Part shown: positions 8,036 through 23,151 of the stretch, in pieces
Layout: each line of letters begins with the position of its first letter
How positions within the stretch are numbered: position 1 is the stretch's first letter
Virus record (IMG/VR): IMGVR_UViG_3300028840_008185
Span: 62,001 to 126,000 of that record
Strand: one strand, 5' to 3'
DNA: 64,000 bases
Program-made: the position numbers and the translations under genes
Notes under the pieces: model-generated
What the model was told of the DNA's origin: nothing
Databases searched by the model: none
Seen by the model: the letters and a program-made list of their open reading frames with translations, nothing else

Positions 8036-8260
8036 GTCCCCATCTCAGTTTTGTTGTTTCGTTCGCAAGTTTAATCTTGAAATCGAAAAAGGCAAAATAT
8101 ATGGCGCTGCCCAAGGGGTTGGCAAAGCGATCTACTGAATCTTTGATGTGATCCAAATGAGGCGAAGAAAATATTCGTGTCATAAAGGGCAATGCAATTG
8201 GCTGATCTTCCCAGGCCCAATTCATCCTTGTTGATATTCTCTCGCGCTTAAAGTTTCTGG

Positions 8261-8894
8261 TCAGCATAACTCTTTCCTGAAAGACTCTATTATGTACTCT
8301 CGTATCGGCTGCCCGAGTCCAAATAAGGTGCGCCTCTTAGCCTCCATCTTGAAAGAGTAGCCAACTTGGCGCCTAAATCCCCAATAGAAAACATTACGCC
8401 TGGCATCTCTGTGAATTGGTTTGATCATGTTATTCCTCAAGCTGATCTATCAGGCTCCATTTTAATTCAGTGCGCGTATCTCCACTCAGATGCAATAATT
8501 CTGCTTGGATTCGGGTTCTTATTCCCCACACATCAATGGGCCAGTGCCGCATCTCCCACAGCCATCCAGCTTTCATGTAAGAACGACGGATGTAATCTAC
8601 AAGATGCATATGTCCCACTAGAGATATTGAGCGATGCACAACTTACCTCGACATACGCATGCAGTTTGACATAAGCACGGCCAGATTTACGCTCAAACCA
8701 CTAAGACCGCTTTGAAGCCTATCTACCACTCCTACATGATCTCTTACCACTATATCATAGCACATATAATCTCTAGGTTTTGAAATAATTACACCATTAC
8801 TTATCAGGCATGTTGATATTACAGGCTCGTCAAAAAACTCCCATAAACATTGTCTAAGCCCTTCGGGGCGTTTTAGAGATATTGAGCGATGCAC
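8261..8894 (-). CDS. Three microproteins (8261-8428, 8430-8639, 8643-8894)
   Basis: 8261-8428 MIKPIH found by hand; the other two both start MHRSISL. Confidence 0.5.
8619..8894. repeat. Exact 21-nt direct repeat (8619-8639 and 8874-8894)
   Basis: tagagatattgagcgatgcac occurs twice. Confidence 0.95.
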
Positions 8895-10570: not shown

Positions 10571-10821
10571 CATTCCAGTGCCTTAATTGAAAGTTCAGCC
10601 AAATTATCAAAGAGAAGAACAGAGCCAACGATGACAAAAGCCGCAAAAACCACCAAAATAATCATCCACATAACAAACTTTCTAGTGGCCTTCTTCTTGC
10701 TCTTTTTCATCAAGAGATCAAAGTCAGAAGTTATCTTCGCCCTTTTTCTTAACTCAGGTTCCACACCGACAACTTCCAATAAGAGATCAGCGGGCTCACG
10801 GTTTTTATCATCAAGGCTCAT
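10570..10821 (-). CDS. Single-TM hypothetical protein
   Basis: 83 aa, one hydrophobic helix. Confidence 0.6.
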   Translation of the reverse strand: MSLDDKNREPADLLLEVVGVEPELRKRAKITSDFDLLMKKSKKKATRKFVMWMIILVVFAAFVIVGSVLLFDNLAELSIKALE

Positions 10822-11111
10822 TTCTTCTTTCTCCTGTTGGCTTGTGCTCTCTGTCTTGCTTTTCTGCCGCGAGAACGACGCATCTTCTTAATAGCCTCAC
10901 GCCGCTCCCTCCTCTTTTTCTCGGAGGGCTTCTCTGCAAAGCGCCTGCGTTTGAGTTCAGCCAAAACGCCCTCATTAGACATCTTCTTTCTCAAAGCTCT
11001 AATCGCCCCTTCCAGATCTCCGTCCCTGACTTCCACCTCCAATGGCCTCACTCTGGGCTCTCTTTTCTCTTTCTTCTTCCAAGCTGGTCTTCTGTCGTCG
11101 CTCATTTTCAT
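10818..11111 (-). CDS. rpsU: Ribosomal protein bS21
   Basis: VEVRDGDLEGAIRALRKK...LKRRRFAEKPSEKKRR. Confidence 0.9.
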   Translation of the reverse strand: MKMSDDRRPAWKKKEKREPRVRPLEVEVRDGDLEGAIRALRKKMSNEGVLAELKRRRFAEKPSEKKRRERREAIKKMRRSRGRKARQRAQANRRKKK

Positions 11112-11409
11112 CTTTCCTTATTGATCTAATGGCCAACATAGCAATCAGGAAGCCAATTAAATCGCTAATAGTATCACCAACAATTTTATTTATGAATAAC
11201 TCGTTACCCGCATATGGGAAGTTGGGTATGTTTTGAACAACCCAATGTTCAAACACTTCCCACATGAAAGCAATTCCAACAGCACCCATCCAAGCATGAC
11301 GCCTGAATACAGAGTATAACATAACCGTGATGGCTATAAACCATACTACATGGTGCAGAGAATACGTATCGAATAAACTAGTCCCTGCTTTTCCCCAAAT
11401 TAGATCCAT
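10999..11409 (-). CDS. Small membrane protein
   Basis: 3 TM helices; HH, WEVFE and GD residues; overlaps rpsU. Confidence 0.55.
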   Translation of the reverse strand: MDLIWGKAGTSLFDTYSLHHVVWFIAITVMLYSVFRRHAWMGAVGIAFMWEVFEHWVVQNIPNFPYAGNELFINKIVGDTISDLIGFLIAMLAIRSIRKDENERRQKTSLEEEREKRAQSEAIGGGSQGRRSGRGD

Positions 11410-12727
11410 CTTGCATAGCTTTCTTAAATAACTCCTCTAAGCTCTTATCTGGGTGTACAGGAACCTGAGTCTCTTTCGGTTCCAAAGAAGCCAGATTGGA
11501 GTGCAGGTTAATGAGGGCAGCATTGCAATACTTACGAGAAACTTCTAAGTCCACAACGCTTTCCTCAATAATCTCGCCATCTTTTATATTACAGTCCAGA
11601 AGAGGCGTGAGGTTTTCTTCTGGTTCAACCGCTCCCTCTATTGCTAATAGATGTTTCCACTCACCATTTCGCTGATCCAAGAAGACTTGTTTGCGGCCAG
11701 GAAAGGTCTTCTTGCCTGCGGACAGTTTCATAAGTGGTCTATCATCTGTATCGTCATATACAACTTTATACACAGCCCCCAGAGAAGGAACATCTCTGGA
11801 AACAACAAGCTCAGTGCCCACAGCAAAAGTGTCGATAGGGGCACCACAACGGGCCAGGTTGTCTATGGCATATTCGTTGAGGTCATTAGACACAATAATC
11901 TTAGCTGACTGCTTGCCATTACTATCCAAAATTCCCCTAACTTTTTTGGACAATGTTTCCAGATTTCCAGAGTCCAGCCTTACTCCTTGTAGTAGCGGAA
12001 TTTGTGCGGCATAAACAGCGCCCATGTCCGTATCGTAGGTGTCAATTAGTAACACAGGGCTTCTATACACATCCTTAAAATCACTGAACGCTCTGGATTC
12101 ACTCTTAGAAACCATGACCCACATATGAGACATTGTTCCAGCAACAGGGATGCCGTATGTTCTGCCCGCCTCAACATTGGAGGTTGCCGCAAACCCAGCA
12201 AGATAGGCAGCTCGGGCTGCTCTAATAGCAGCTTCATGGTGGGTTCTTCTGGTGCCAAACTCTAAGACTGGTCGCCCACGGGCGGCGAGAACAATTCTCG
12301 CCGCCTTGGAGGCAACCTTAATATCATGGTTCAACACCGAAAGGGCAAAGGTTTCGGCCATATGAACTTCCGGCAGCGTTCCAGACACCCTTATAAGTGG
12401 CTCACCAGCAAAAGCAATCTCGCCTTCCGCCATCGCCCAGAAGTCACCCCTGAAGGAGAAATCTTCCAAGTATTTAGCGAAGTTAGACATAGAGAAAGCT
12501 GGCTTGAGAGCTTTAACTTCCCTGAGATACTTGATGTCGTCTGCCGTGAATCGCAGGCTGGTGAGGAAGTCTCTAATCTCCTCGGTCCCAGCCATCACGA
12601 GAAACCTTCTCTCTGGGGGCAACTTCCTCACAAAACCTTCACAAGTCACTTTCTTTTTGTGAAGACCTTTCACATAGTAAGCCGCCATCATTGTGAGCTG
12701 ATAAAGGTCAGTCTTTAAAGCGTCCAT
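11378..12727 (-). CDS. pncB: Nicotinate phosphoribosyltransferase
   Basis: TDLYQLTM, EFGTRRTH, TSNV, GTMSH (phospho-His), IDTYDT, VRLDSG, SNDLNE. Confidence 0.95.
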   Translation of the reverse strand: MDALKTDLYQLTMMAAYYVKGLHKKKVTCEGFVRKLPPERRFLVMAGTEEIRDFLTSLRFTADDIKYLREVKALKPAFSMSNFAKYLEDFSFRGDFWAMAEGEIAFAGEPLIRVSGTLPEVHMAETFALSVLNHDIKVASKAARIVLAARGRPVLEFGTRRTHHEAAIRAARAAYLAGFAATSNVEAGRTYGIPVAGTMSHMWVMVSKSESRAFSDFKDVYRSPVLLIDTYDTDMGAVYAAQIPLLQGVRLDSGNLETLSKKVRGILDSNGKQSAKIIVSNDLNEYAIDNLARCGAPIDTFAVGTELVVSRDVPSLGAVYKVVYDDTDDRPLMKLSAGKKTFPGRKQVFLDQRNGEWKHLLAIEGAVEPEENLTPLLDCNIKDGEIIEESVVDLEVSRKYCNAALINLHSNLASLEPKETQVPVHPDKSLEELFKKAMQDGSNLGKSRD

Positions 12728-12728
12728 A

Positions 12729-12857
12729 TTACCACCATATCTCCTGTTCTGGGAACAGAAATTTGCGTCCCCATCGATCATAGACCAAAACCCACTCGTC
12801 ATTATAATAAAATTCGTGGATATAAACCCTACCCAAAACAGGATTCCAGCCGGCCAT
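12729..12857 (-). CDS. 42-aa aromatic-rich microprotein
   Basis: Hand translation MAGWNPVLG...EIWW; exactly fills the gap between genes. Confidence 0.5.
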   Translation of the reverse strand: MAGWNPVLGRVYIHEFYYNDEWVLVYDRWGRKFLFPEQEIWW

Positions 12858-13315
12858 TAGAAATACCAGTTTGGCCAAGGCCCCATTTTTGCTTCATCCC
12901 ACTGATTAAACACGAGCCTCAACTCTCGTCTTGCGATCAGCATTTCCTGCATCAGGCGAAAATAAGCCCGTTTGCGCTTTTCGTATTCAGCATCGCTTCT
13001 TATAGGGCGAGGTTTATACTGTCCCTCTTCCTTTCCACGAGGCGGGCGCACCAGCCCGGAAGAAACTGAAACTGGCTCGGGGGTGATAATTCCCCTGTCG
13101 ATTAGTTCCTGTCGCTTTCTAGCGCTGGCTTCCTTAGTTGATAGAGCCACGGGATTTCCCTTTTTGATAAATAGCTCTGGGTTTTTGGACGGTCTAATCA
13201 TACCTACATAGATGAGGGCATTCCTTCTAGCAGCACACTCTTCGTCAGTAGCAACCGGCAACTCATCATGAACATCATTAGCATTAAGAATTTTACTCAT
13301 CTTTGTTTCTCCCAA
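12857..13315 (-). CDS. Hypothetical protein with internal repeat
   Basis: ECAARRNALIYVGMIRP / EASARKRQELIDRGIITP. Confidence 0.6.
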   Translation of the reverse strand: MGETKMSKILNANDVHDELPVATDEECAARRNALIYVGMIRPSKNPELFIKKGNPVALSTKEASARKRQELIDRGIITPEPVSVSSGLVRPPRGKEEGQYKPRPIRSDAEYEKRKRAYFRLMQEMLIARRELRLVFNQWDEAKMGPWPNWYF

Positions 13316-14184
13316 AATCGTTTGCGTTCGTCGGGAACTTTATTCAAATTCTCCTCAGTGTTTAGTTTAGTATTATATACATTATCTATGCTAAATTCAA
13401 CTCCGTGAGACCTGATGTCTTCACGGTCAATGGCCTTTCTAGCGTAGTTCATTATGATGGTTGCGGCACTTACATTAACCTGCATATTTTGGGGCGCCGA
13501 GAGCGCCCTGTCTGCACAAGAAAGCTCGGAGTTGAAACCATCTTCACTGTCTATGAGTTCTGGATAGTGATCCATAACACAGGGCAAACTGAATTCTCCA
13601 ACCGCATTACCACTAAAAGGGCCAGCCTTTATAATTCCATAGTGTCCTCTCCTAGTTGGCGCGTAGCCACAGACAACCTGCCCCGCCTTTTCTTCGTTTC
13701 CAGAATCAATCCAGAACTTAGCATGAAAGTCTTCAGTTGTAAACCACTCATGTATTACCCTACGAGAGGCGTTATTATCCACACAGCCTATCACCATATA
13801 GGCAGAATCACTCCCGATTGAGTAGTGATTCAGAGCATCATTTATATCCTCCACCTTCTCTAAATCATTGGGGATTGCTTTAATCTCCAAACCAAAAGCG
13901 GAAGAATATCTTTCCGCCATCACCATGGCCTTGTTCTTGGAGATGTCCTGCATAATAAAGTGCTGTCTTTTAAGATTCTTTTCCTCGACCATATCTCCAT
14001 CGGCCAGAATTAGATTTACAGTTCTGCGCTCACCAGAATCGTTTTTGACTTTTACATACCTAGCCAAATGGGGGATCAAGTGCCCACCAGTCCCGCCACA
14101 ACCAATAACAAGAATGGTTCTGACGGGCCTATAGCCGGCCAGAGAATAAACTTTCTGGAGTATCTTAATTTTCTTCGCAGCCAT
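13297..14184 (-). CDS. ThiF/E1 ubiquitin-activating-like enzyme (PRTRC ThiF type)
   Basis: IGCGGTGG, DGDMVEEKNLKRQ, CVDN, WIDSGN, catalytic-type LSCAD. Confidence 0.92.
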   Translation of the reverse strand: MAAKKIKILQKVYSLAGYRPVRTILVIGCGGTGGHLIPHLARYVKVKNDSGERRTVNLILADGDMVEEKNLKRQHFIMQDISKNKAMVMAERYSSAFGLEIKAIPNDLEKVEDINDALNHYSIGSDSAYMVIGCVDNNASRRVIHEWFTTEDFHAKFWIDSGNEEKAGQVVCGYAPTRRGHYGIIKAGPFSGNAVGEFSLPCVMDHYPELIDSEDGFNSELSCADRALSAPQNMQVNVSAATIIMNYARKAIDREDIRSHGVEFSIDNVYNTKLNTEENLNKVPDERKRFWEKQR

Positions 14185-14185
14185 T

Positions 14186-15226
14186 TTAGAACTTCTTTCC
14201 TCTATGATCAGTTGGCTCGGCTTCAACGCGCTGGCCACGCTCCACATACCACTGCTTCTCGCCATCCTTTACAAACCAGAGCTTATCATCCTCTCTGACA
14301 TAAAACCCCTCATCCTCATCATCGTCATCATCGTCATCGGGTAGATAATGCATGCTGTGGCCAAGATGCTCATCATCAAAGAGTTTAGCTACATCATCGA
14401 TTTCATCTATCTCTGCACCAGAACCAAACATCGAAATCTGTCTGCCGGGCCAACCGCCGCCGGGAAAAGTGTACGCTTGGTTGCCGCCCTTGCCCCTGGT
14501 TCTTTTGGTCTTCTTCGGCTTTTTCTTCTTTATTCTATCGACCCAATCGCTCGGGAAATTTTCGGCGTGATAAAGCTCATCGTCCATCTCGAACAAATCT
14601 TCAACATCTACTTCATACTCTCTACCACCTACCACCAAGCGCAACACCATGTCTGGGAAGAAATCAGTGATGCTTCCAATCACTCCATAGAAACGATCAG
14701 ACTTCTCATCTGCATCATCAACCATAGAGAATGAAGCGCCCATGTTACCGTGGCTATGAATCTCAAAGACAAGAATCTTTGAATCATATTCGGGGTCATT
14801 CTTGTAATTTACAGACGCCCCACTAACCACCTGCTTAGGGCAGTGAAGAATATATTTCTCTTCTTTTTGATCGTAGTAGAACTGTAAGAACACTTCGCTT
14901 GAGTGTTTCCTATAGATGCGACGGAAGAAGGCCACAGTAGTCCCCAAAAGATTGATGGGAATCTTTGGAACATTAAGCTCCCAACCACTAACCATGGTTT
15001 CATCCAGACCAGGGACGGCCACCTTGGCAATTCTCGAATCAAAAGTCCCAAGCCTATTAATCCTGCGCTCCCAAAGACCATCACCCTGAAGAACATATAT
15101 GATCTTCTTCTTGCAGTCTTCTGGGATGCTTTCTACGTAGTGGCCAACCATCATCTTCTGGAGAGCCAGTCTCTTGTCCTTGTCCACCTTTGGCTTCGGC
15201 TTCTTATAACTTCCCCACACGCTCAT
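14186..15226 (-). CDS. Prokaryotic JAB deubiquitinase-like protein (PRTRC A type) with acidic tail
   Basis: SSEVF; EIHSHGNMGASFSMVDDADE; poly-Asp tail. Confidence 0.85.
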   Translation of the reverse strand: MSVWGSYKKPKPKVDKDKRLALQKMMVGHYVESIPEDCKKKIIYVLQGDGLWERRINRLGTFDSRIAKVAVPGLDETMVSGWELNVPKIPINLLGTTVAFFRRIYRKHSSEVFLQFYYDQKEEKYILHCPKQVVSGASVNYKNDPEYDSKILVFEIHSHGNMGASFSMVDDADEKSDRFYGVIGSITDFFPDMVLRLVVGGREYEVDVEDLFEMDDELYHAENFPSDWVDRIKKKKPKKTKRTRGKGGNQAYTFPGGGWPGRQISMFGSGAEIDEIDDVAKLFDDEHLGHSMHYLPDDDDDDDEDEGFYVREDDKLWFVKDGEKQWYVERGQRVEAEPTDHRGKKF

Positions 15227-15918
15227 TAGCTACTCCCTTCAATAACTTGGGCCAACGTATAGCCCTTCTTGTACATTAAATCCTCAGGAAACTCTTCCAT
15301 ATTCTCTACATACTTAACCAAGCCCCACAAGTTGTCTACGGGGTCTTCTCCGGGGCCCACTGTCGGGTGGACAAAAGCGCCCTCATTAATCAAATCCCCA
15401 TTAAACCCAGAATCAAAGAACATAGCAAGGGCGCCGATCAGATCCATGGGTTTTGTGATGTTGCCCAAACGTGCATCACCCCAGCAAATTCTACCATCCT
15501 CATATACATTACCATATGGGAAACCATATAACGACTCTGACCAATTATTAAGTGGCGCAGCAAGGCAGAAAAGCCAAGTGTTAAAGGACCGGTTGTTTTT
15601 AATGTGCATCACAAACAAGCTTCTTGGAACTGGCAAAAACTTTCTAACGCCATCTTCAACATTGTCTATCTGTAATGGACGCTTCTTTGGAATCAATTCC
15701 ACACCTATGTAATAATCCGAGGGGCTTCCTTTATAGAACCTTGTCCCTCGCGGCAAAATGTCAGTAGATATGCGATGAGAACTTGCGAGTTGTGTTATTA
15801 AATCATCGACAGATATAGTCTTCTGACCCACTGTCCCATCAGGACCAATTAAACTAACCTGCACCTCCGAGGAGTTTGAAGATATTCTCGCAGTCAGGTC
15901 ATAACTTCCAGCATCCAT
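15226..15918 (-). CDS. Prokaryotic E2 family protein (PRTRC B type)
   Basis: LPVPRSLF; FPYGNVYEDGRICWG with catalytic Cys; FFDSGFNGDL. Confidence 0.8.
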   Translation of the reverse strand: MDAGSYDLTARISSNSSEVQVSLIGPDGTVGQKTISVDDLITQLASSHRISTDILPRGTRFYKGSPSDYYIGVELIPKKRPLQIDNVEDGVRKFLPVPRSLFVMHIKNNRSFNTWLFCLAAPLNNWSESLYGFPYGNVYEDGRICWGDARLGNITKPMDLIGALAMFFDSGFNGDLINEGAFVHPTVGPGEDPVDNLWGLVKYVENMEEFPEDLMYKKGYTLAQVIEGSS

Positions 15919-16745
15919 TAAGCTCCTCCTCCACCTCCAGCAGACCTATTTCCTCTGAATCTGCTAAGGGCTTGCTCAAATCTGTTCTGTGCATTCTCTC
16001 TTCTTCTATCAGCTTCCGCAGAGACCTGTGCGGCAACAGCCGCTCGTCTCTCCTCTTCTATTCTATTGGCTTCCGCTGCTTCTGCATCTCGGGCTGCTCT
16101 TTGCGCCGCCAACTCTCTGTCGGCCCTGTACCTTGCTTCCTCTGCTGCACGCCTTTGTTCTTCACGCTGCCTTCTTTGCTCAGCCTCTATTTCATCCCGT
16201 TTTGTCTGGAAAAAATCATAGAAGTCGCGCAACGATTGTATATTAGTGTCCCACAACTCTTTGAATTCAATACAATCTAGCGCACACTCATAAAACTTCT
16301 CGCTGGGTCTGTATCCACCCATTGTGTTGGATCGGTTAATAGCACATACCTTTATTTCATATGGAAGATAAGGAGCTACATAAGAGGTTCCAGTTGCGAG
16401 CTGATTATATTTCTCAACCGCATTTGCTCCCATATCTCCACATGCTTGCCTTAGGCGAGTGTCATACGTCAGGGTATTGATTGTATTGAGCATTTGCCTA
16501 TCATCGCGCGAAATATTTACGCGGAGACTCTCATATTGAGTCTGGACTTTGGAACCGACAAACAGGTGTTTTTCTAAGAGAGATTTTAAAAGCCTTCTTC
16601 CAGCAGCGGTGGCCGTATTGTCGCCATCATATTCCGTGGGCATTTTTCTTTTACGCTTTGCTACACCCAAAGAACGACACAACCTAAAAAGGCGCAGAAA
16701 ATCTATCTGCATGTATTGCTGTCTAAACGAAAACATATCCCTCAC
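15918..16745 (-). CDS. Hypothetical protein with long charged coiled coil (PRTRC F position)
   Basis: 275 aa; Glu/Arg/Ala-rich helix; synteny only. Confidence 0.55.
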   Translation of the reverse strand: MRDMFSFRQQYMQIDFLRLFRLCRSLGVAKRKRKMPTEYDGDNTATAAGRRLLKSLLEKHLFVGSKVQTQYESLRVNISRDDRQMLNTINTLTYDTRLRQACGDMGANAVEKYNQLATGTSYVAPYLPYEIKVCAINRSNTMGGYRPSEKFYECALDCIEFKELWDTNIQSLRDFYDFFQTKRDEIEAEQRRQREEQRRAAEEARYRADRELAAQRAARDAEAAEANRIEEERRAAVAAQVSAEADRRRENAQNRFEQALSRFRGNRSAGGGGGA

Positions 16746-16748
16746 GCC

Positions 16749-17003
16749 TTAAATAAAGTTAATCTTAGTTGCCCTAACCGCTGGCAAGTTCAAAATTATT
16801 TGCTTGATATTAACGGCTTGCGGAATCTGCGCAGCCATCCTATCAAGCTCATCCTCTAAAGCTTGGAGTTCTGCGTCAGTTGCAAAGTCATCATCAAAGC
16901 TCATGGGCGTTTTAATGGCCATGAGTTTATCAAGCAGCTCTTTACAATCCGCATTAAACTCTCTTAGCTCATCACAATTATCAAATATCTGTTTTGGATT
17001 CAT
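16749..17003 (-). CDS. Small acidic hypothetical protein in Ubl cassette
   Basis: 84 aa coupled ORF. Confidence 0.6.
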   Translation of the reverse strand: MNPKQIFDNCDELREFNADCKELLDKLMAIKTPMSFDDDFATDAELQALEDELDRMAAQIPQAVNIKQIILNLPAVRATKINFI

Positions 17004-17019
17004 ATTGAAACCTCGTAGT

Positions 17020-17049
17020 GGCCCGCCTGGGAGCGACCCCAGGCGGGCC
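17020..17049. other. 12-bp GC hairpin directly after the Ubl gene
   Basis: ggcccgcctggg-N6-cccaggcgggcc; no U-tail on the coding strand. Confidence 0.8.
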
Positions 17050-17055
17050 TAGTTT

Positions 17056-17238
17056 TTACCCCTTGGAACCAGCACGAAGTGCAAAGGTGTAGCTGCCGTC
17101 GGGATTCTCGACAACTTCCGCATTGGCGATGGCCGCGTGGCAGTCTTCCCAAACAGCCCTAACCTCATCAACACTCATATCAGCAGGAGCCTTGATCTCT
17201 TCATCCATGAAACGGTAAATAGTGAATTCTTCAGACAT
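17056..17238 (-). CDS. Ubiquitin-like protein (PRTRC C type)
   Basis: 60 aa, predicted beta-grasp pattern, C-terminal RAGSKG; AGGAGG RBS; synteny with E2/JAB/E1. Confidence 0.8.
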   Translation of the reverse strand: MSEEFTIYRFMDEEIKAPADMSVDEVRAVWEDCHAAIANAEVVENPDGSYTFALRAGSKG

Positions 17239-17249
17239 TTCTTCCTCCT

Positions 17250-18759
17250 TTAGCCTTCAAGACGCTCAAGTAGAGCAACGGCACGGTCAAATCCCATCTC
17301 ATCCAGGGCATCCTTAAAATTCTCGATGTGCCGAATATCGACAGGACCATACCCGCCGTCGAGAACCATGCTAATAGCCTGGTTGAGTGCATCCTCAATA
17401 CTCTCGTAACTGATCGCACCACGAATCTCACCATCGAGATTAATGCGAGCAAGATACACCTCTTCCTCATCCGCCCACTCATTTTCCTGAGTCGGCACCG
17501 CACCGACAGTAACCACGACGCGGTTTTCATACTCTGCAAAGAGTCTACCGAGTAGCTCTTCGGCTTCACTGAGTCTAATCATGTTTCCTCCTTTTTAAAC
17601 TCAAAAAAATACATATCCATAGACAAAAACTTCTCACCTCCTCTCTTTACTTTCCGCCTCTGTCTCTGCCGGGAGAGCGAGAAGTTCCCTCTCGCCTACG
17701 GACAGTTTCCCAATCAAGCCACTGGCCAGTGGTTTCATCGATAATTACTAGGGCTTGATCCTTGTTAATTCTGCGCACAGGAATACCGGCAAGCCTACCA
17801 TTAGTTGCCCTGTTCGCACCAGCATACTTCACGTTATACCGCTTGAGAGACTCAACAAGCAGGTGGTCTCTATGAGCCTCAAGAACCTTGACTCGCATCT
17901 CCTGCTTCGTCTGGTCAAACTGCGAGGTCTTGCGAGTCGCATAAATAATATAAGTGTGATTACTCGTCCTTACTTGATCCTGATCCGACATCTTCTTTCT
18001 CCTCTCTCTTTATTGCTTCGATCACTTGATCAACCTGCTCCTTGCATGAAGCAGTTTTCACTACACCATCTAATTCTTCATTGAGCTTGACTAACTGCTC
18101 CTCAGTAATGAGCCCCGACTTTACAAATGTCTGCGCAATTACTTTCGAAGCAAGCATGAAACTAATGAACAACGTCCCAAATGGAACTGGGGAATCTTTC
18201 GTGAGACCCGCAATTCTTATAAAATGGTCGATGAACAATTGAGTCACATCGCTCAATCCTTTAAACCTTTCCATCATGATCCTCAACAAACTTGCCGTTC
18301 CAGTAATATCCGAACCAACACCAGAAGGCACCCATGATACAGAGCACAGCGAAGTGTGGCACTGGAGCGACAAGATACGTGACAGCACTCCCGATCATAA
18401 ATATCACCGCCAGGATCAAAAATATCTTCCGGAGCACTTTAGATATTTGAGATTGCAAGCTCATCTGTAAACTTCTCCATATCCATGAGGATTTCGTCAG
18501 CCGGTTCAACGGCAGCCTCCACATCCTCCATCTTGTCCAGTATCGTCTGTATCTCCTCAAGAATATCAATAACTCGCGAAAGCCTGGCCATCCAGTTGTC
18601 AGATTTCTTCATTGCGGGAAGTAAATCTCTGGCCTTCTGGAGCCTCGTACTGATATACACCTCTACATCTCTTAGCCTATCCGTTGTATTCAGGGCACTT
18701 TTCTCAAATTCCTCCAATTGGTCTGAAAGCTTCCTTGAAATATCATCTAGTTCGTTCAT
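17250..18759 (-). CDS. Hypothetical proteins (17250-17582, 17647-17991, 17960-18277, 18261-18464, 18439-18759)
   Basis: Coupled ORFs; one with TM helices, one coiled coil. Confidence 0.5.
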
Positions 18760-19036: not shown

Positions 19037-19081
19037 AAGAGCGAAAAAAATCAAATATCCCGCTCCACACGCGCAATTTTT
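19037..19081. promoter_or_regulatory. 45-bp dispersed intergenic motif, copy A
   Basis: 35/45 identical to 61522-61566. Confidence 0.6.
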
Positions 19082-21422
19082 AACCTTCCAAATTGATAAG
19101 CGACTCCTCACCGGAGTTCACTTTCCCCATGGGCTTCTTATCCACGCTGCCATTGGTGCCCATCATAATTATATCCAGCGCCTCTTCCAAGTTGGATACA
19201 GGCGTTAGTTTGATGCTATTCTTCACATCGTTAGGAACCTCCTCCAGGTCGCACTTGTTTCTTATGGGGAACACAACTTCACTAAGGCTGGCTCTGTGAG
19301 CCGCAAGAGTCTTCTCCAGAAGGCCACCAATAGGGAGGACTCTCCCGCGCAAAGAAATCTCACCAGTCATTCCAACATCATTTCTAATTGGCCTGTCCGT
19401 GAGGGCAGATAAGATTGATGCAGCAATGGCGATTCCAGCGCTCGGGCCATCCTTAGGTGTCGCTCCAGCTGGAAAGTGAATGTGGACATTATTCTCAGCG
19501 AACTTTTCAGGGCTAAGACCAAACTTGTCAGCGTTGGACCTAATCCAAGTATAGGCTGCTGACGCAGATTCTTTAAGAACCTTGCCAAGATTGCCTGTCA
19601 GAACAATTTTGCCCTTGCCTTTGACCAACGCAGATTCCACAAACAGCAGTGAGCCCCCACTAACCGCCCAAGCGAGTCCAGTAGCAACACCAACAGAGGG
19701 CTCCTCAATCGCCTGCTGAGTAAAGATCTTACTTGGCCCCAGATACTTGTGAATCATGTCGGTCTTTATAATGGCGGGCGGCTTCTTCTTAGAGGCAACC
19801 TGAACAGCAACCTTCCTGAAAACACTGCCGCACTCTCTTTCGAGGGATCTAACACCAGCTTCACTCGTATATTCCTCGATGATTTTGTTGATTGCATTCT
19901 TGGAGAAAGCAATCTCATGATCCTTGAGCCCCTTCTCCTCTTTCTGCTTGGGAATCAAGTGCTTCTTGGCAATCTGTAGCTTATCATGCGGGGAATAACC
20001 AGGCAGCTTGATAATCTCCATCCTGTCTAACAGAGCGGGCTGGATGTTGCCCCTGGTATTAATTGTAGCAATGAAGAACACATTCGACAAGTCAAAAGAC
20101 ATGCCGAGGTAATTATCGTTGAAAGAGTGATTCTGCTCCGGGTCAAGAACCTCCAACAGTGCCGAACCAGGATCGCCTCTGAAGTCTCTGCCCAACTTAT
20201 CCAACTCGTCCAACATGAACACCGGATTATTAACACCAACCTTCTTGATGAGCTGGATAATCCTACCTGGCATCGCGCCAACATAGGTTCTTCTGTGGCC
20301 ACGAATCTCTGCCTCATCATGGACACCACCAAGCGAAGTGCGGATAAACTCACGTCCCATAGCTTCTGCGATGCTCTTGCCAAGGCTCGTTTTACCTGTT
20401 CCAGGAGGGCCAATAAAGCAAAGAATCGAGCCCTTTCTCTCTGGAGCAAGCTTCTTAACCGCAAGAAACTCCAGGATTCTTTCTTTTGGTTTCTTAAGAC
20501 CAAAGTGATCTCTGTCCAGAATCTCTTTGCCCTTCTCAATATCCAAGCTGTCTTCAGTGCTCTTGCCCCACGGCAAAGAAGCCAACGTTTCCAAGTAATT
20601 AAACATAACTTGGAACTCTGCGCCATTAGGAGGGGTCATAGAGAGCCGCCTCATTTCCTGCTGTGCAATCTTCATGTTTTCTTCAGGCATTCCGGACTTC
20701 TGGAGCTTCTCGGCCAGCCGCCTAATTTCAGCCTGCATGGGATCTTCGCCCTGCTGTTGTGGGTCATTTGAAATCAAAACTTCAGTATTTTTGGACAACT
20801 CCGTGACCATCGCAACAAGTCTTTTCAGTCTTTCCGCTGGGCTTGGTATATGCAGAAGATCAAGGAGTTTCTCTCGCGAAACGATTCCCTGTTTATCAAC
20901 CTGTAGCTGACCAGCGATGTCGTCCAAAAAAGCCGCAAGATCTTGGCTGTTTTTGGGAGTTTCTTTCTTCTTGAGAGCAATACTAGGTAGGTGCTCAGAG
21001 ATCGTATCGTAAAGAACCTTCACCTGCTCCTTGATATCATCGGTGATCTCAACCTCTTCTTCTTGCACATATTCAATCTCACCCTGGAGATACTGCTCTT
21101 CTCCTTCTGTAAGCCCAACAATTTTGAGATGGGCCCGCCTAACACCAACGAGAATGACTCTAAGATGTGGCTCATCTTTTGCGCCTGCTTTCAACACACT
21201 TTTAATCTGTGCCTCCGTGCATTGACCGAGAAAGTCTTTGGCCACTGGCTCATCAACATCTTTGTCTGTCTGCAAACCTACAATGATGTTAATCTCGTTA
21301 TTCTTGGCCACATTTATGGCGTTTACAGAGAACTCTCGGCCAACTTCCACCTCGCAAAAGTTTCCAGGAAAAACCACCAGGTCGGGGTCTCGAATGGGCA
21401 AAATAGGTAGAGTCGCTTTCAT
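19080..21422 (-). CDS. lon: Lon protease
   Basis: LON_N domain; GPPGTGKT; MLDELDK; PKDGPSAG (Ser); IGGLLEK (Lys). Confidence 0.97.
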   Translation of the reverse strand: MKATLPILPIRDPDLVVFPGNFCEVEVGREFSVNAINVAKNNEINIIVGLQTDKDVDEPVAKDFLGQCTEAQIKSVLKAGAKDEPHLRVILVGVRRAHLKIVGLTEGEEQYLQGEIEYVQEEEVEITDDIKEQVKVLYDTISEHLPSIALKKKETPKNSQDLAAFLDDIAGQLQVDKQGIVSREKLLDLLHIPSPAERLKRLVAMVTELSKNTEVLISNDPQQQGEDPMQAEIRRLAEKLQKSGMPEENMKIAQQEMRRLSMTPPNGAEFQVMFNYLETLASLPWGKSTEDSLDIEKGKEILDRDHFGLKKPKERILEFLAVKKLAPERKGSILCFIGPPGTGKTSLGKSIAEAMGREFIRTSLGGVHDEAEIRGHRRTYVGAMPGRIIQLIKKVGVNNPVFMLDELDKLGRDFRGDPGSALLEVLDPEQNHSFNDNYLGMSFDLSNVFFIATINTRGNIQPALLDRMEIIKLPGYSPHDKLQIAKKHLIPKQKEEKGLKDHEIAFSKNAINKIIEEYTSEAGVRSLERECGSVFRKVAVQVASKKKPPAIIKTDMIHKYLGPSKIFTQQAIEEPSVGVATGLAWAVSGGSLLFVESALVKGKGKIVLTGNLGKVLKESASAAYTWIRSNADKFGLSPEKFAENNVHIHFPAGATPKDGPSAGIAIAASILSALTDRPIRNDVGMTGEISLRGRVLPIGGLLEKTLAAHRASLSEVVFPIRNKCDLEEVPNDVKNSIKLTPVSNLEEALDIIMMGTNGSVDKKPMGKVNSGEESLINLEG

Positions 21423-22527: not shown

Positions 22528-23151
22528 TTAGCTGTCCTTTTTAGCCTTAGATTTCTTAAACAGCGTATCTAACTTGGCTCGCTTAAAAGCCTTCGCTATG
22601 TCCAGAGTGAATTGGCCCGAAGGATAATATCCCTTGGCTCCGTAGCGTGCTATTCGTTTGATACATACGGATAGATTGTCCGTGTAGATGAAGTTAAACT
22701 CCTTGGCCATGGCGTCATTTTTTGCGTCCATGATATAGCAGAAGTCATCTCCGTCTATGGCAAAACAGCACACAGTAAAGTCAAACTTCCTAAAAATATC
22801 AGCTACTTCTCTATACCAGTGCCGCGTAACCAATTGTAAATCAACACCGGCAAGTTGAAAAGTCACGCTCCACTCGCTCTCCGTAGTTTTAACAAACCCT
22901 TTGCTCTCAAAGATTTGCTTTGCTTCACCCCACCGTTTTCGCGAACTAAAGAACACATCCCAGTCTTTAATCTGGTTGTAATCTCCCGTGTATAGAGCAA
23001 GCGCGGCCCCTCCTGCAATCCAACATCCCTCCATATTTTTGGTCGTGTCAATGATTAACCTATCTATGGAGGGCAGAGAAAGTATGCTGGACCTTCTATC
23101 TTGAAGCACATCATTAAAGGGCTCTCTAACCACCGTAAAATCCGGGGCCAT
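22528..23151 (-). CDS. Nucleotidyltransferase (poly(A) polymerase/CCA head-like)
   Basis: IAGGAA, DWDVFF, FDFTVCCFAI. Confidence 0.7.
   Translation of the reverse strand: MAPDFTVVREPFNDVLQDRRSSILSLPSIDRLIIDTTKNMEGCWIAGGAALALYTGDYNQIKDWDVFFSSRKRWGEAKQIFESKGFVKTTESEWSVTFQLAGVDLQLVTRHWYREVADIFRKFDFTVCCFAIDGDDFCYIMDAKNDAMAKEFNFIYTDNLSVCIKRIARYGAKGYYPSGQFTLDIAKAFKRAKLDTLFKKSKAKKDS

What the first reader, a model, noticed from the sequence alone, without database searches (positions are those of the whole stretch)
13297..17238. Phage-borne ubiquitin-like conjugation cassette (Ubl, X, Y, E2, JAB, E1) without ParB
Seen: co-oriented 60-aa Ubl ending GSKG, E2 with ICWG Cys, JAB with HSH-x7-S-x2-D and E1 with nucleotide loop and SC Cys. 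Known: this matches the C-F-B-A-ThiF order of PRTRC cassettes on plasmids/ICEs, whose function is unknown. Bacterial E1/E2/JAB systems (CBASS Cap2/3, Bil) are anti-phage. Inference: the element runs its own protein-tagging system against host or competitor proteins, or to decoy host Ubl defences. The two unassigned genes may be E3 or substrate adaptors.
Basis: partly seen in the sequence, partly recalled or inferred. Interest (0 to 1): 0.85.

Follow-up and report, generated by a model that had tools for sequence, protein, structure and literature searches.

The report
Ubiquitin-like tagging cassette in huge phage
A huge marine-sediment phage (at least 318 kb) carries an apparently complete six-gene kit for attaching a small ubiquitin-like protein to other proteins; it is a divergent, ParB-less relative of the long-known but never tested PRTRC cassettes, and it sits next to a phage Lon protease.

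Summary
Six co-oriented, tightly packed minus-strand genes encode:
- a 60-aa Ubl ending KG;
- a small protein X (84 aa);
- protein Y (275 aa);
- a Prok-E2_D E2 with Cys145;
- a JAB/JAMM protease with the full E..HSH..S..D motif;
- a ThiF-type E1 whose real start is M28 (295 aa), with a GxGGxG loop and an invariant SC cysteine.

C, B, A and ThiF match the PRTRC models significantly but below NCBIfam cut-offs. Y does not match PRTRC_F. No ParB domain was found in 66 ORFs of the window.

The contig is an IMG/VR huge phage. About 1,200 E1 relatives exist, and 179 lie on viral contigs.

New evidence for real conjugation:
- 28 of 29 Ubl homologues end in KG. Half of those carry one extra residue, and one relative has a tandem Ubl, so they are precursors that need trimming.
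- X always ends in an aromatic-hydrophobic tail.
- A GC-rich hairpin follows the Ubl gene in five of eight relatives checked.
- Layout-A phage loci carry Lon or ClpP within 8 kb (9 of 11, against 0 of 69 others).

This cassette type was described in 2006, and PRTRC genes are already annotated in phage Dina. I call it a new variant of a known kind. Targets and role are untested.

The parts
17056..17238 (-). Ubl: 60-aa ubiquitin-like modifier ending AGSKG, with a strong AAGGAGG ribosome-binding site
   Evidence: TIGR03738 E=0.0076. It aligns with canonical PRTRC_C. The AF2 model has pLDDT 86.8 with a beta-beta-alpha-alpha-beta-beta order. The top Foldseek PDB hits are ubiquitin-fold proteins and GB1, but E is at least 0.07. 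28 of 29 homologues end in KG or KG plus one residue.
17020..17049 (-). GC-rich stem-loop (12-13 bp) between the Ubl stop and the X start. Candidate partial terminator or mRNA stabiliser that would set Ubl in excess over the enzymes.
   Evidence: The fold is -34.4 kcal/mol with z = -4.3. Equivalent hairpins with unrelated sequence sit at the same place in L002 (with a U-run), L005, L012 and L019, but not in L003, L004 or L072.
16749..17003 (-). X: 84-aa protein of unknown function with a conserved C-terminal aromatic-hydrophobic tail (..NFI)
   Evidence: Homologue in L002 at 45% identity, E=5e-21. Positional equivalents of 78-128 aa in many loci end in FI, YI, FV, YF or CF, with two exceptions (L019 ends MLI, L042 ends DFL). 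No family match. The Atlas gave no lead.
15918..16745 (-). Y: 275 aa (gene callers start it at M4, 272 aa). It has an N-terminal alpha/beta globular part with a KRKRKMP motif, one long charged helix (residues 151-270), and a conserved C-terminal AQxxFxxAL motif.
   Evidence: 85 representatives in 1.84 billion proteins, all 60-307 aa. AF2 pLDDT 94. No PDB fold match. The only significant BFVD match is a 509-aa viral protein, the same length as gp213 of Bacillus phage WH1, which sits in the Y position (hhalign E=2.3e-4). No similarity to PRTRC_F.
15226..15918 (-). E2-like conjugating enzyme (Prok-E2_D, PRTRC_B-like); candidate catalytic Cys145 with Asn137 eight residues upstream
   Evidence: N137, C145, P98 and F167 are invariant in 15 sequences that include canonical PRTRC_B.
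14186..15226 (-). JAB/JAMM metalloprotease (PRTRC_A-like) with an N-terminal alpha+beta domain and a long acidic C-terminal extension
   Evidence: TIGR03735 E=8.1e-12. E111, H157, S158, H159, S167 and D170 are invariant.
13297..14184 (-). E1: single-domain ThiF-type adenylating enzyme, 295 aa from M28 (the ORF runs up to 14265)
   Evidence: TIGR03736 at 131.2 bits against a cut-off of 144.75; PF00899. Start site. Nucleotide-loop, Arg/Gln, Lys and Asp residues are conserved, and Cys250 is invariant where aligned.
12857..13315 (-). dn152: 152-aa protein that overlaps the E1 stop. Membership of the cassette is uncertain.
   Evidence: Conserved at the same place in L002-L005 only. No family match.
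19080..21422 (-). Phage Lon protease (780 aa), 1.8 kb upstream of the Ubl gene. Candidate functional partner by linkage only.
   Evidence: Pfam LON_substr_bdg, AAA, Lon_lid and Lon_C. Syntenic in L002, L003 and L005. ClpP takes its place in L006, L010, L012, L019 and L072.

Best explanation
The six genes encode a self-contained ubiquitin-like protein conjugation pathway that the phage brings into the infected cell.

Proposed steps, all inferred from homology and conserved residues:
1. The ThiF-type E1 binds ATP and adenylates the C-terminal glycine of the 60-aa beta-grasp Ubl.
2. The Ubl passes as a thioester to the invariant E1 cysteine (Cys250) and then to Cys145 of the E2-like protein.
3. 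The E2 transfers the Ubl to amino groups of target proteins.
4. The JAB metalloprotease trims Ubl precursors to expose the glycine and probably also removes the tag. This window's Ubl already ends in Gly. Half of its relatives carry one extra residue, and one relative has a tandem Ubl.

X and Y are conserved accessory subunits. Y has a globular head, a helix of about 120 residues and a conserved tail motif, and it is the best candidate for a scaffold or target adaptor. X docks somewhere through its invariant aromatic-hydrophobic C-terminus. A hairpin after the Ubl gene probably makes the modifier more abundant than the enzymes.

The most likely biological role is phage-directed remodelling of the proteome of the infected cell, possibly by marking proteins for the phage's own Lon protease (ClpP in related phages). 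This step is inferred from linkage alone.

I put the biochemical core at about 0.8 and the link to proteolysis at about 0.25.
For: - Homology of four components to PRTRC C, B, A and ThiF and to Prok-E2_D and ThiF.
- All catalytic-type residues are invariant across phage, plasmid and genome copies.
- The Ubl model is confident and has a beta-grasp-like order of elements.
- Ubl ends: 14 of 29 homologues end in KG, 14 end in KG plus one variable residue, and one paralogue lacks KG. L002 has a head-to-tail di-Ubl, and phage Dina's Ubl carries a 62-aa extension after KG.
- The six genes are packed with gaps of -1 to 3 nt, apart from 52 nt that hold the hairpin.
- The six-gene layout recurs in at least four separate E1 lineages and on plasmid pAZI09.
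- E2-JAB-E1 occur together in 59 of 80 viral and 53 of 80 genome loci.
- Lon or ClpP lies within 8 kb in 9 of 11 layout-A viral loci, in 0 of 69 other viral loci and in 0 of 80 genome loci. The two proteases are unrelated, their positions differ, and the loci fall in three E1 lineages.
- Neighbours are Gad2 (a family named for an anti-defence protein), NAD-salvage genes, RNA-repair genes and chaperones.
Against: - No experiment exists on any PRTRC-type cassette, as far as my searches show.
- The Ubl's structural matches are not significant (E at least 0.07), as expected for 60 residues but still weak.
- The role of Cys250 rests on invariance only. Solved E1 relatives align only to the nucleotide-binding half.
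- E2 and JAB have no solved relative.
- No RNA run was listed, so expression is not shown for this phage.
- The Lon/ClpP linkage could reflect shared ancestry of these jumbo phages. No background frequency could be computed.
- X and Y have no assignable activity.
Confidence: 0.5

Rival explanations
1. Exclusion of competing phages. The cassette works like the bacterial Bil system and tags structural proteins of co-infecting or superinfecting phages, so that the resident phage keeps the cell for itself.
For: [quoted passage not shown] The same four enzyme classes are present here.
Against: The cassette sits in a block that is syntenic across 243-441 kb phages whose E1 proteins share only 44-50% identity, unlike typical variable defence islands. 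No PADLOC model other than weak CBASS E1-E2 hits matches. The E1 is single-domain, not the IAD-AAD-CYS type of Bil.
Confidence: 0.12
2. Counter-defence by deconjugation or decoy. The JAB protease strips host Ubl or CD-NTase conjugates, or the phage Ubl and E1 soak up host enzymes, and so disarm Bil- or CBASS-type immunity.
For: Neighbours include a Gad2-family gene (named for an anti-defence protein), NAD-salvage genes and RNA-repair genes. The JAB active site is intact.
Against: A pure deconjugase would not need its own Ubl, E1, E2, X and Y, all of which are conserved with intact active sites. The JAB is closest to PRTRC_A, not to Cap3 or BilC models.
Confidence: 0.1
3. Not protein tagging. 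The Ubl is a sulfur carrier, or the E1 is a MccB-like peptide-adenylating enzyme that makes a small modified product. In that case X, with its conserved C-terminus, could be the substrate.
For: The best solved sequence relatives of the E1 are MccB and ThiF. X has a strictly conserved C-terminal tail, like a precursor peptide.
Against: An E2-like protein with an invariant Cys and Asn, and a JAMM protease, are conserved with the E1. No sulfurtransferase or desulfurase is in the cassette. One-residue and tandem Ubl precursors are hallmarks of conjugated modifiers.
Confidence: 0.05
4. Maintenance module. As the PRTRC name implies, the cassette serves partition or stable inheritance of the element, as assumed for plasmids and ICEs.
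For: Homology and shared gene order with plasmid PRTRC. The 'partitioning cassette' reading is repeated in PMC13366799.
Against: No ParB domain is in the window. The partition role has never been tested. None of the components has a DNA-binding signature.
Confidence: 0.03

Closest known systems
PRTRC cassette (ParB-Related, ThiF-Related Cassette; TIGR03734-03742), which is operon type 6d of Iyer, Burroughs and Aravind 2006 (PMC1779556)
   Same: Ubl (C), E2-like (B), JAB (A) and ThiF-type E1 are homologous and in the same order. A small gene and a large, rapidly diverging gene lie between Ubl and E2, as on plasmid pAZI09. The Ubl ends in G-x-K-G. E1 has the SC cysteine and E2 the N-x7-C motif.
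   Different: All four scores fall below the curated cut-offs. Y shows no similarity to PRTRC_F. There is no PRTRC_E, PRTRC_D or ParB match. The JAB carries a long C-terminal extension. The His that Iyer et al. describe after the E2 Cys is Asp in most phage copies. The carrier is a huge phage, and the cassette is linked to Lon or ClpP.
PRTRC genes annotated in small temperate phages (Ralstonia phage Dina NC_055026; Burkholderia gladioli prophage AB2 and phage BgVeeders33)
   Same: A phage-borne Ubl-E2-JAB-E1 cassette. No ParB is annotated in the 8.7 kb stretch of Dina that was read (PMC13366799).
   Different: Those cassettes pass the PRTRC models and carry F and E. Their E1 groups with the plasmid PRTRC, far from the window's clade in the E1 tree. 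Dina's Ubl is fused to a 62-aa extension.
Bil (BilABCD) anti-phage ubiquitination systems
   Same: Separate Ubl, E2, JAB peptidase and E1. The Ubl is conjugated to proteins (PMC11601596).
   Different: [quoted passage not shown] Here the E1 is a 295-aa single domain and the Ubl a 60-aa single beta-grasp. Bil is host-encoded and this cassette is phage-encoded. No PADLOC hit beyond weak CBASS E1-E2 matches.
Type II CBASS Cap2/Cap3 and 6A-MBL E1-E2 fusions
   Same: The E1 adenylation domain is distantly related (NF058523 E=1.2e-6, PADLOC E1-E2 E=3.6e-8). A JAB partner is present.
   Different: In those systems E1 and E2 are fused and there is no Ubl, because the CD-NTase itself is conjugated. Here the enzymes are separate and a dedicated Ubl exists.
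Bub (6E/DUF6527) operons
   Same: The Ubl precursor must be cleaved by the system's own peptidase before use. Poly-Ubl forms exist (PMC11601596; compare the L002 tandem Ubl).
   Different: Bub fuses the peptidase to an E1 that lacks a catalytic Cys, and it uses a DUF6527 E2-like protein. Here there are a JAMM peptidase, a separate E1 with an invariant Cys, and a Prok-E2_D.

Membership tests
PRTRC cassette (NCBIfam/TIGRFAM definitions) | ThiF-family E1 that passes TIGR03736 | tested here: not met
   131.2 bits against a cut-off of 144.75, E=3.8e-38. This is clear homology just under the curated threshold. IMG names close homologues 'PRTRC genetic system ThiF family protein'.
PRTRC cassette (NCBIfam/TIGRFAM definitions) | Proteins A (JAB), B (E2) and C (Ubl) that pass TIGR03735, TIGR03737 and TIGR03738 | tested here: not met
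   45.1 against 101.8, 30.1 against 131.45 and 16.4 against 45.95 bits. All are homologous (E=8e-12, 3e-7 and 0.008) but far below the cut-offs.
PRTRC cassette (NCBIfam/TIGRFAM definitions) | Protein F (TIGR03742) between C and B | tested here: not met
   None of 21 phage Y-position proteins hits TIGR03742. The two canonical F proteins hit it (best E=1.4e-105). hhalign of the Y profile against both canonical F proteins gives probability 0.1%.
PRTRC cassette (NCBIfam/TIGRFAM definitions) | ParB-family protein and proteins D and E nearby | tested here: not met
   No ParBc among 66 window ORFs of 100 aa or more at E<=1e-4. No PRTRC E or D hit for the flanking ORFs. The rest of the genome was not seen.
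PRTRC cassette (NCBIfam/TIGRFAM definitions) | Gene order C - (small) - large - B - A - ThiF on one strand | tested here: met
   The window has 60-84-275-230-346-295 aa, and pAZI09 has 69-78-339-252-225-267 aa.
Iyer 2006 operon type 6d (Ubl, JAB, E1, E2-like, alpha-helical protein) | All five protein classes are present. [quoted passage not shown] The helical protein diverges rapidly. | tested here: met
   Y is largely helical and diverges fast. The 'absolutely conserved His after the Cys' is Asp or His in phage copies, so this sub-feature is only partly met.
Pfam Prok-E2_D, ThiF and Prok-JAB | Score at or above the gathering threshold | tested here: met
   PF14460 scores 30.5 against 25 and PF00899 scores 57.2 against 28.1. 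PF14464 Prok-JAB scores 20.5 against 25, which is not met, although the JAMM motif is complete.
Ubiquitin-like modifier (conjugated beta-grasp protein) | Beta-grasp fold and a C-terminal Gly that is exposed or exposable by processing | tested here: inconclusive
   The fold is modelled at pLDDT 86.8 with a beta-grasp-like order, but Foldseek E is at least 0.07. The terminal KG is conserved in 28 of 29 homologues and half carry one extra residue. Conjugation itself cannot be tested here.
Bil (BilABCD) | [quoted passage not shown] | tested here: not met
   The E1 is 295 aa with a single ThiF domain. The Ubl is 60 aa with a single domain.
Type II CBASS Cap2/Cap3 | Fused E2-E1 protein next to a CD-NTase, with no Ubl | tested here: not met
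   E1 and E2 are separate genes and a Ubl is present. Only weak partial E1 hits were found.

The most novel reading that the evidence does not exclude
Huge and jumbo phages run their own tag-and-destroy pathway. The phage Ubl system marks host or phage proteins, and the tagged proteins are fed to the phage-encoded Lon or ClpP protease. X and Y would act as target adaptor and delivery factor. This would be a viral, bacterial-world analogue of the ubiquitin-proteasome and Pup-proteasome systems, used for host takeover or to destroy defence proteins.
Probability: 0.15. Interest if true: 0.9.

Novelty: new variant of a known kind. Interest (0 to 1): 0.62.

Why it matters
Bacterial ubiquitin-like systems studied so far (type II CBASS, Bil, Bub) are host-encoded. 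CBASS and Bil are shown to act against phages, and an immune or stress role is only suggested for Bub. The PRTRC or 6d type has been known from sequence since 2006, but I found no functional test of it.

This cassette shows that a large, widespread clade of huge and jumbo phages keeps a complete and apparently active version of that type in a conserved part of the genome. About 1,200 E1 relatives exist, 179 of them on viral contigs.

The precursor-type Ubl ends, the conserved X tail and the repeated linkage to Lon or ClpP give concrete hypotheses that can be tested. Cultured relatives exist for knock-outs and proteomics: Bacillus phages WH1, Edson and KLEB27-3, Salmonella phage Arash, Vibrio phages D69, D148 and D181, and Ralstonia phage Dina.

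If phages use Ubl tagging offensively, that would mirror how eukaryotic viruses exploit ubiquitin.

Tried and rejected
- **Y as a diverged PRTRC_F.** No NCBIfam hit for any phage Y. hhalign gave probability 0.1%. jackhmmer from a canonical F protein pulled in no phage Y. Not supported.
- **Fold of Y.** The model is confident (pLDDT 94), but nothing matched in the PDB. The only viral match is a protein whose length equals that of the WH1 protein in the Y position.
- **X.** No family match in any library, and the Atlas gave only chance-level leads.
- **ParB.** None found in the window.
- **Reverse transcriptase next to E1 in relatives as a diversity-generating retroelement.** This was suggested by a 2026 preprint on a prophage PRTRC protein B. 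No template/variable repeat pair was found in five loci, and the enzymes score as retron-type. Rejected for these loci.
- **'Structural protein' label on the E1 and E2-position proteins of Salmonella phage Arash.** The virion proteome listed 116 proteins out of the record's 272 annotated features, including ribonucleotide reductases. It shows at most that the proteins are made.
- **Expression.** No RNA run was listed.
- **Selection from population variants.** The three DNA runs hold identical sequence, so nothing could be computed.
- **Upstream ORF (17250-17582) as a PRTRC_E equivalent.** It is conserved only within sublineages and has no model hit.
- **DNA-level similarity to deposited phages.** None found.
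- **Structure prediction with canonical PRTRC_C rows.** I repeated the prediction without those rows.

Full report
**What is there.** The stretch 13297-17238 holds six co-oriented minus-strand ORFs:
- Ubl, 17056-17238, 60 aa, ending GSKG.
- X, 16749-17003, 84 aa.
- Y, 15918-16745, 275 aa.
- E2, 15226-15918, 230 aa.
- JAB, 14186-15226, 346 aa.
- E1, 13297-14265.

The genes are packed. The Y/E2 and E2/JAB junctions overlap by one base, and X/Y are 3 nt apart. Homologue N-termini and the sequence around the JAB stop (TAA, one base, then ATG with GAGGAAAG upstream) place the E1 start at M28. That makes E1 13297-14184, 295 aa. The only real spacer is 52 nt between Ubl and X, and it holds a 12-13 bp GC-rich hairpin.

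**Family assignment.** NCBIfam gives:
- PRTRC_ThiF: E=3.8e-38, 131 bits, cut-off 144.75.
- PRTRC_A: E=8.1e-12, 45 bits against 102.
- PRTRC_B: E=2.8e-7, 30 bits against 131.
- PRTRC_C: E=0.0076, 16 bits against 46.

X, Y and the flanking ORFs match nothing. Pfam gives ThiF and Prok-E2_D above their gathering scores and Prok-JAB just below. PHROGs has no family for any of the six at a significant level. PADLOC gives only weak partial hits of the E1 to CBASS E1-E2 proteins. The cassette is therefore homologous to PRTRC but belongs to a divergent branch that the curated models would not name.

This cassette type is operon type 6d of Iyer, Burroughs and Aravind 2006: Ubl, JAB, E1, an E2-like protein and a rapidly diverging alpha-helical protein (PMC1779556).

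**Active sites.**
- In an alignment of 15 E2 proteins that includes canonical PRTRC_B from plasmid pAZI09 and phage Dina, P98, N137, C145 and F167 are invariant. The Asn lies eight residues before the Cys, as in classical E2 enzymes.
- In the JAB alignment, E111, H157, S158, H159, S167 and D170 are invariant, which is the complete JAMM motif. Phage JABs carry long, variable C-terminal extensions that the canonical proteins lack.
- Across 84 E1 proteins, G55, G57, Q101, K112 and D163 are invariant, R100 is present in 82, and Cys250 is present in all 73 that align there, the canonical ones included.
- Solved structures related by sequence (MccB, ThiF, UBA5, UBA6) align only to the nucleotide-binding half of E1. 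The catalytic role of Cys250 is therefore inferred from invariance.
- No solved relative of the E2 or JAB was found.

**The Ubl.**
- It aligns with canonical PRTRC_C over its whole length, including the terminal G-x-K-G.
- An AlphaFold2 model from 12 sequences has pLDDT 86.8 and the order beta-beta-alpha-alpha-beta-beta.
- Foldseek against the PDB returns Elongin B, ubiquitin, BAT3/BAG6 UBL domains and protein G B1 at the top, but no E-value below 0.07. The fold is consistent with a minimal beta-grasp but is not proven.
- The C-termini are stronger evidence. Of 29 homologues from a 5.8-billion-protein search, 14 end in KG. Another 14 end in KG plus exactly one variable residue (N, Q, A, L, R or C). 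One paralogue lacks KG. Four of the 29 carry Pfam PF14454.
- In the related 244 kb phage contig L002, the Ubl gene is a head-to-tail duplication (..RAGTKG then AERTYRF..RAGTKGV), followed by a third Ubl-like gene without KG.
- In Ralstonia phage Dina the Ubl continues for 62 residues after KG.
- One-residue caps, tandem Ubl genes and fusions are what eukaryotic ubiquitin precursors look like. They imply a processing peptidase, for which the JAB is the obvious candidate.

**X and Y.**
- The canonical PRTRC cassette on plasmid pAZI09 also has a 78-aa and a 339-aa gene between C and B, so the six-gene layout is shared.
- X-position proteins (78-128 aa) are hardly alignable. Nearly all end in an aromatic residue followed by a hydrophobic one: NFI, TFI, DFI, FFI, TYI, DYF, DFV, TFV and, on pAZI09, PCF. 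L019 (MLI) and L042 (DFL) are the exceptions.
- In a second group of phages, which includes Salmonella phage Arash, the order of the X-like and Y-like genes is swapped.
- Y has 85 representatives among 1.84 billion proteins, all 60-307 aa and without names.
- Y's AlphaFold2 model is very confident (pLDDT 94). It shows an alpha/beta globular part (residues 1-150, with a KRKRKMP motif), one uninterrupted helix from 151 to 270 rich in Glu, Arg and Ala, and a conserved AQxxFxxAL motif near the end. Shorter homologues lack most of the helix, which suggests a spacer of variable length.
- Nothing in the PDB resembles Y. The single significant viral match is a 509-aa protein (E=2e-4). It has the same length as gp213 of Bacillus phage WH1, which sits in the Y position and gives a weak profile match (E=2.3e-4). 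I could not verify that the two are the same protein.
- Y shows no similarity to PRTRC_F.

**Carrier and distribution.**
- The window is part of IMG/VR contig IMGVR_UViG_3300028840_008185 (318 kb). The same genes lie on a 452 kb contig and on others from independent samples.
- The stretch is identical in whole contigs of two sediment or seawater DNA runs, and in fragments of a third run.
- Nearly all genes are on one strand. Neighbours include ribosomal protein S21, an RF-1-like protein, a Gad2-family protein, Lon, HSP20, DnaJ, NAPRTase, NAD synthase, a cytidylyltransferase-like enzyme, Tpt1, RlaP, DNA ligase, a CCA-adding enzyme, a protein kinase and PP2C.
- E1 relatives number about 1,200 in the large protein collection, many on contigs of 150-460 kb. 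They lie on 179 viral contigs and at 298 places in bacterial genomes; the best 80 of these, which were the ones listed, are mostly gut Clostridia.
- Four viral contigs of 243-441 kb (L002-L005, E1 identity 44-50%) keep the whole cassette together with some of the same flanking genes.
- Cultured phages with relatives include Bacillus phages WH1, Edson and KLEB27-3, Vibrio phages D69, D148 and D181, Salmonella phage Arash and Ralstonia phage Dina. Dina is already annotated with PRTRC E-C-F-B-A-ThiF.
- Phage-borne PRTRC is therefore not new as an annotation. I found no functional study of it.

**Regulatory hint.** The hairpin after the Ubl gene folds at -34.4 kcal/mol (z = -4.3). Hairpins of unrelated sequence occupy the same place in L002 (followed by a U-run), L005, L012 and L019. 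In L003 and L004 the Ubl and X genes abut and there is no hairpin, and L072 has no comparable stem. Position is conserved but sequence is not. That fits a partial terminator or a 3' stabiliser that would make the modifier more abundant than the enzymes. This is an inference.

**Linkage to proteases.**
- Among the 80 viral loci, Lon (L001, L002, L003, L005) or ClpP (L006, L010, L012, L019, L072) lies within 8 kb of the cassette in 9 of the 11 loci with the window's gene layout. It lies within 8 kb in none of the other 69 viral loci and in none of the 80 genome loci.
- ClpP sits upstream in some loci and downstream in others.
- In an E1 tree, these loci fall into three separate lineages: the Lon clade, L006/L012/L019 and L010/L072. 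The layout itself is scattered on both sides of the midpoint, next to the canonical plasmid form.
- Two unrelated proteases that keep company with the same cassette is suggestive of a functional tie. The carrier phages may be related, and I could not compute a background frequency, so I rate this link at about one in four.

**Conclusion.**
- The biochemical reading rests on homology, invariant catalytic residues, precursor-type Ubl ends and operon structure. It runs: adenylation by E1, thioester relay through E1 Cys250 and E2 Cys145, transfer to targets, and maturation and reversal by JAB. I put it at about 0.8.
- What is tagged, and why, is open. The leading idea is remodelling of the proteome of the infected cell, perhaps coupled to the phage protease.
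- The rivals are exclusion of competing phages in the manner of Bil, counter-defence by deconjugation or decoy, a non-protein product, and a maintenance role.
- The cassette works like the PRTRC or 6d type and descends from it, but it fails the curated membership thresholds and lacks recognisable F, E, D and ParB. I therefore file it as a new variant of a known kind.

Noticed in passing
L006:10085-10954, L010:9066-9917, L012:9686-10720, L019:8954-9808, L072:9242-10132, L023:13267-14457 (relatives; not in the window): A retron-type reverse transcriptase (Pfam RVT_1; PADLOC retron RT classes, best E=1e-53 to 1e-70 per protein) is encoded just downstream of the E1 gene in 13 of 45 E1-identity groups of viral loci. 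In L019 it abuts the E1 stop codon. No template/variable repeats were found, so it is not a diversity-generating retroelement. I know of no retron type with Ubl-system partners.
   Followed up: partly
L006:11529-11934 and L012:11273-11726: Phage-encoded tmRNA genes (Rfam RF00023, 90 and 71 bits) lie about 3 kb downstream of the Ubl cassette, in loci that also carry ClpP. That puts a second protein-tagging system beside the first.
   Followed up: no
L002:4568-4918 and L002:4921-5100: A tandem, head-to-tail di-Ubl gene with a one-residue cap, like a polyubiquitin gene. It is followed by a third Ubl-like paralogue that lacks the terminal KG.
   Followed up: partly
window 22528-23151 (-): A 207-aa protein with a precomputed Pfam PF26128 (Gad2) hit, three genes upstream of Lon. 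The family is named for an anti-Gabija phage protein.
   Followed up: no
window 10818-11111 (-) and window about 8100-8450 (-): Ribosomal protein S21 (PF01165) and an RF-1-like protein (PF00472) are called on the same contig close to the cassette. Both are translation-related genes.
   Followed up: no
window 11378-12802 (-), with further NAD and RNA-repair genes elsewhere in the window: An NAPRTase-like gene lies two genes downstream of E1, as it does in L002-L004. In Bacillus phage WH1 a NADAR gene directly follows the E1. The window also holds NAD synthase, a cytidylyltransferase-like enzyme, Tpt1, RlaP, DNA ligase and a CCA-adding enzyme, which looks like an NAD-salvage and RNA-repair neighbourhood.
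   Followed up: partly
L088-L164 (Clostridia genome loci) and L007-L016: In the Clostridia-type loci the genes upstream of E2 differ. Several proteins in the same locus end in Ala-Ala (..KEAA, ..ERAA, ..RKAA), and no G-x-K-G Ubl was found. This may be a different modifier or a processing signal.
   Followed up: no
L084 (Salmonella phage Arash gp246c and gp248c): The E1 protein and the protein in the E2 position are annotated 'structural protein' from a virion mass-spectrometry list of 116 proteins. The list also holds ribonucleotide reductases, so it shows that the proteins are made, not that they are packaged.
   Followed up: partly
window 14229-14375: The poly-Asp run in the JAB C-terminal extension (GAT/GAC repeats) attracts many unrelated short contigs in the read layout. 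The depth spike there is an artefact of low complexity.
   Followed up: yes
window 17647-17991 (-): A 114-aa protein two genes upstream of the Ubl is better conserved (59-71% identity in L002-L004) than any cassette protein. It has no family match.
   Followed up: no
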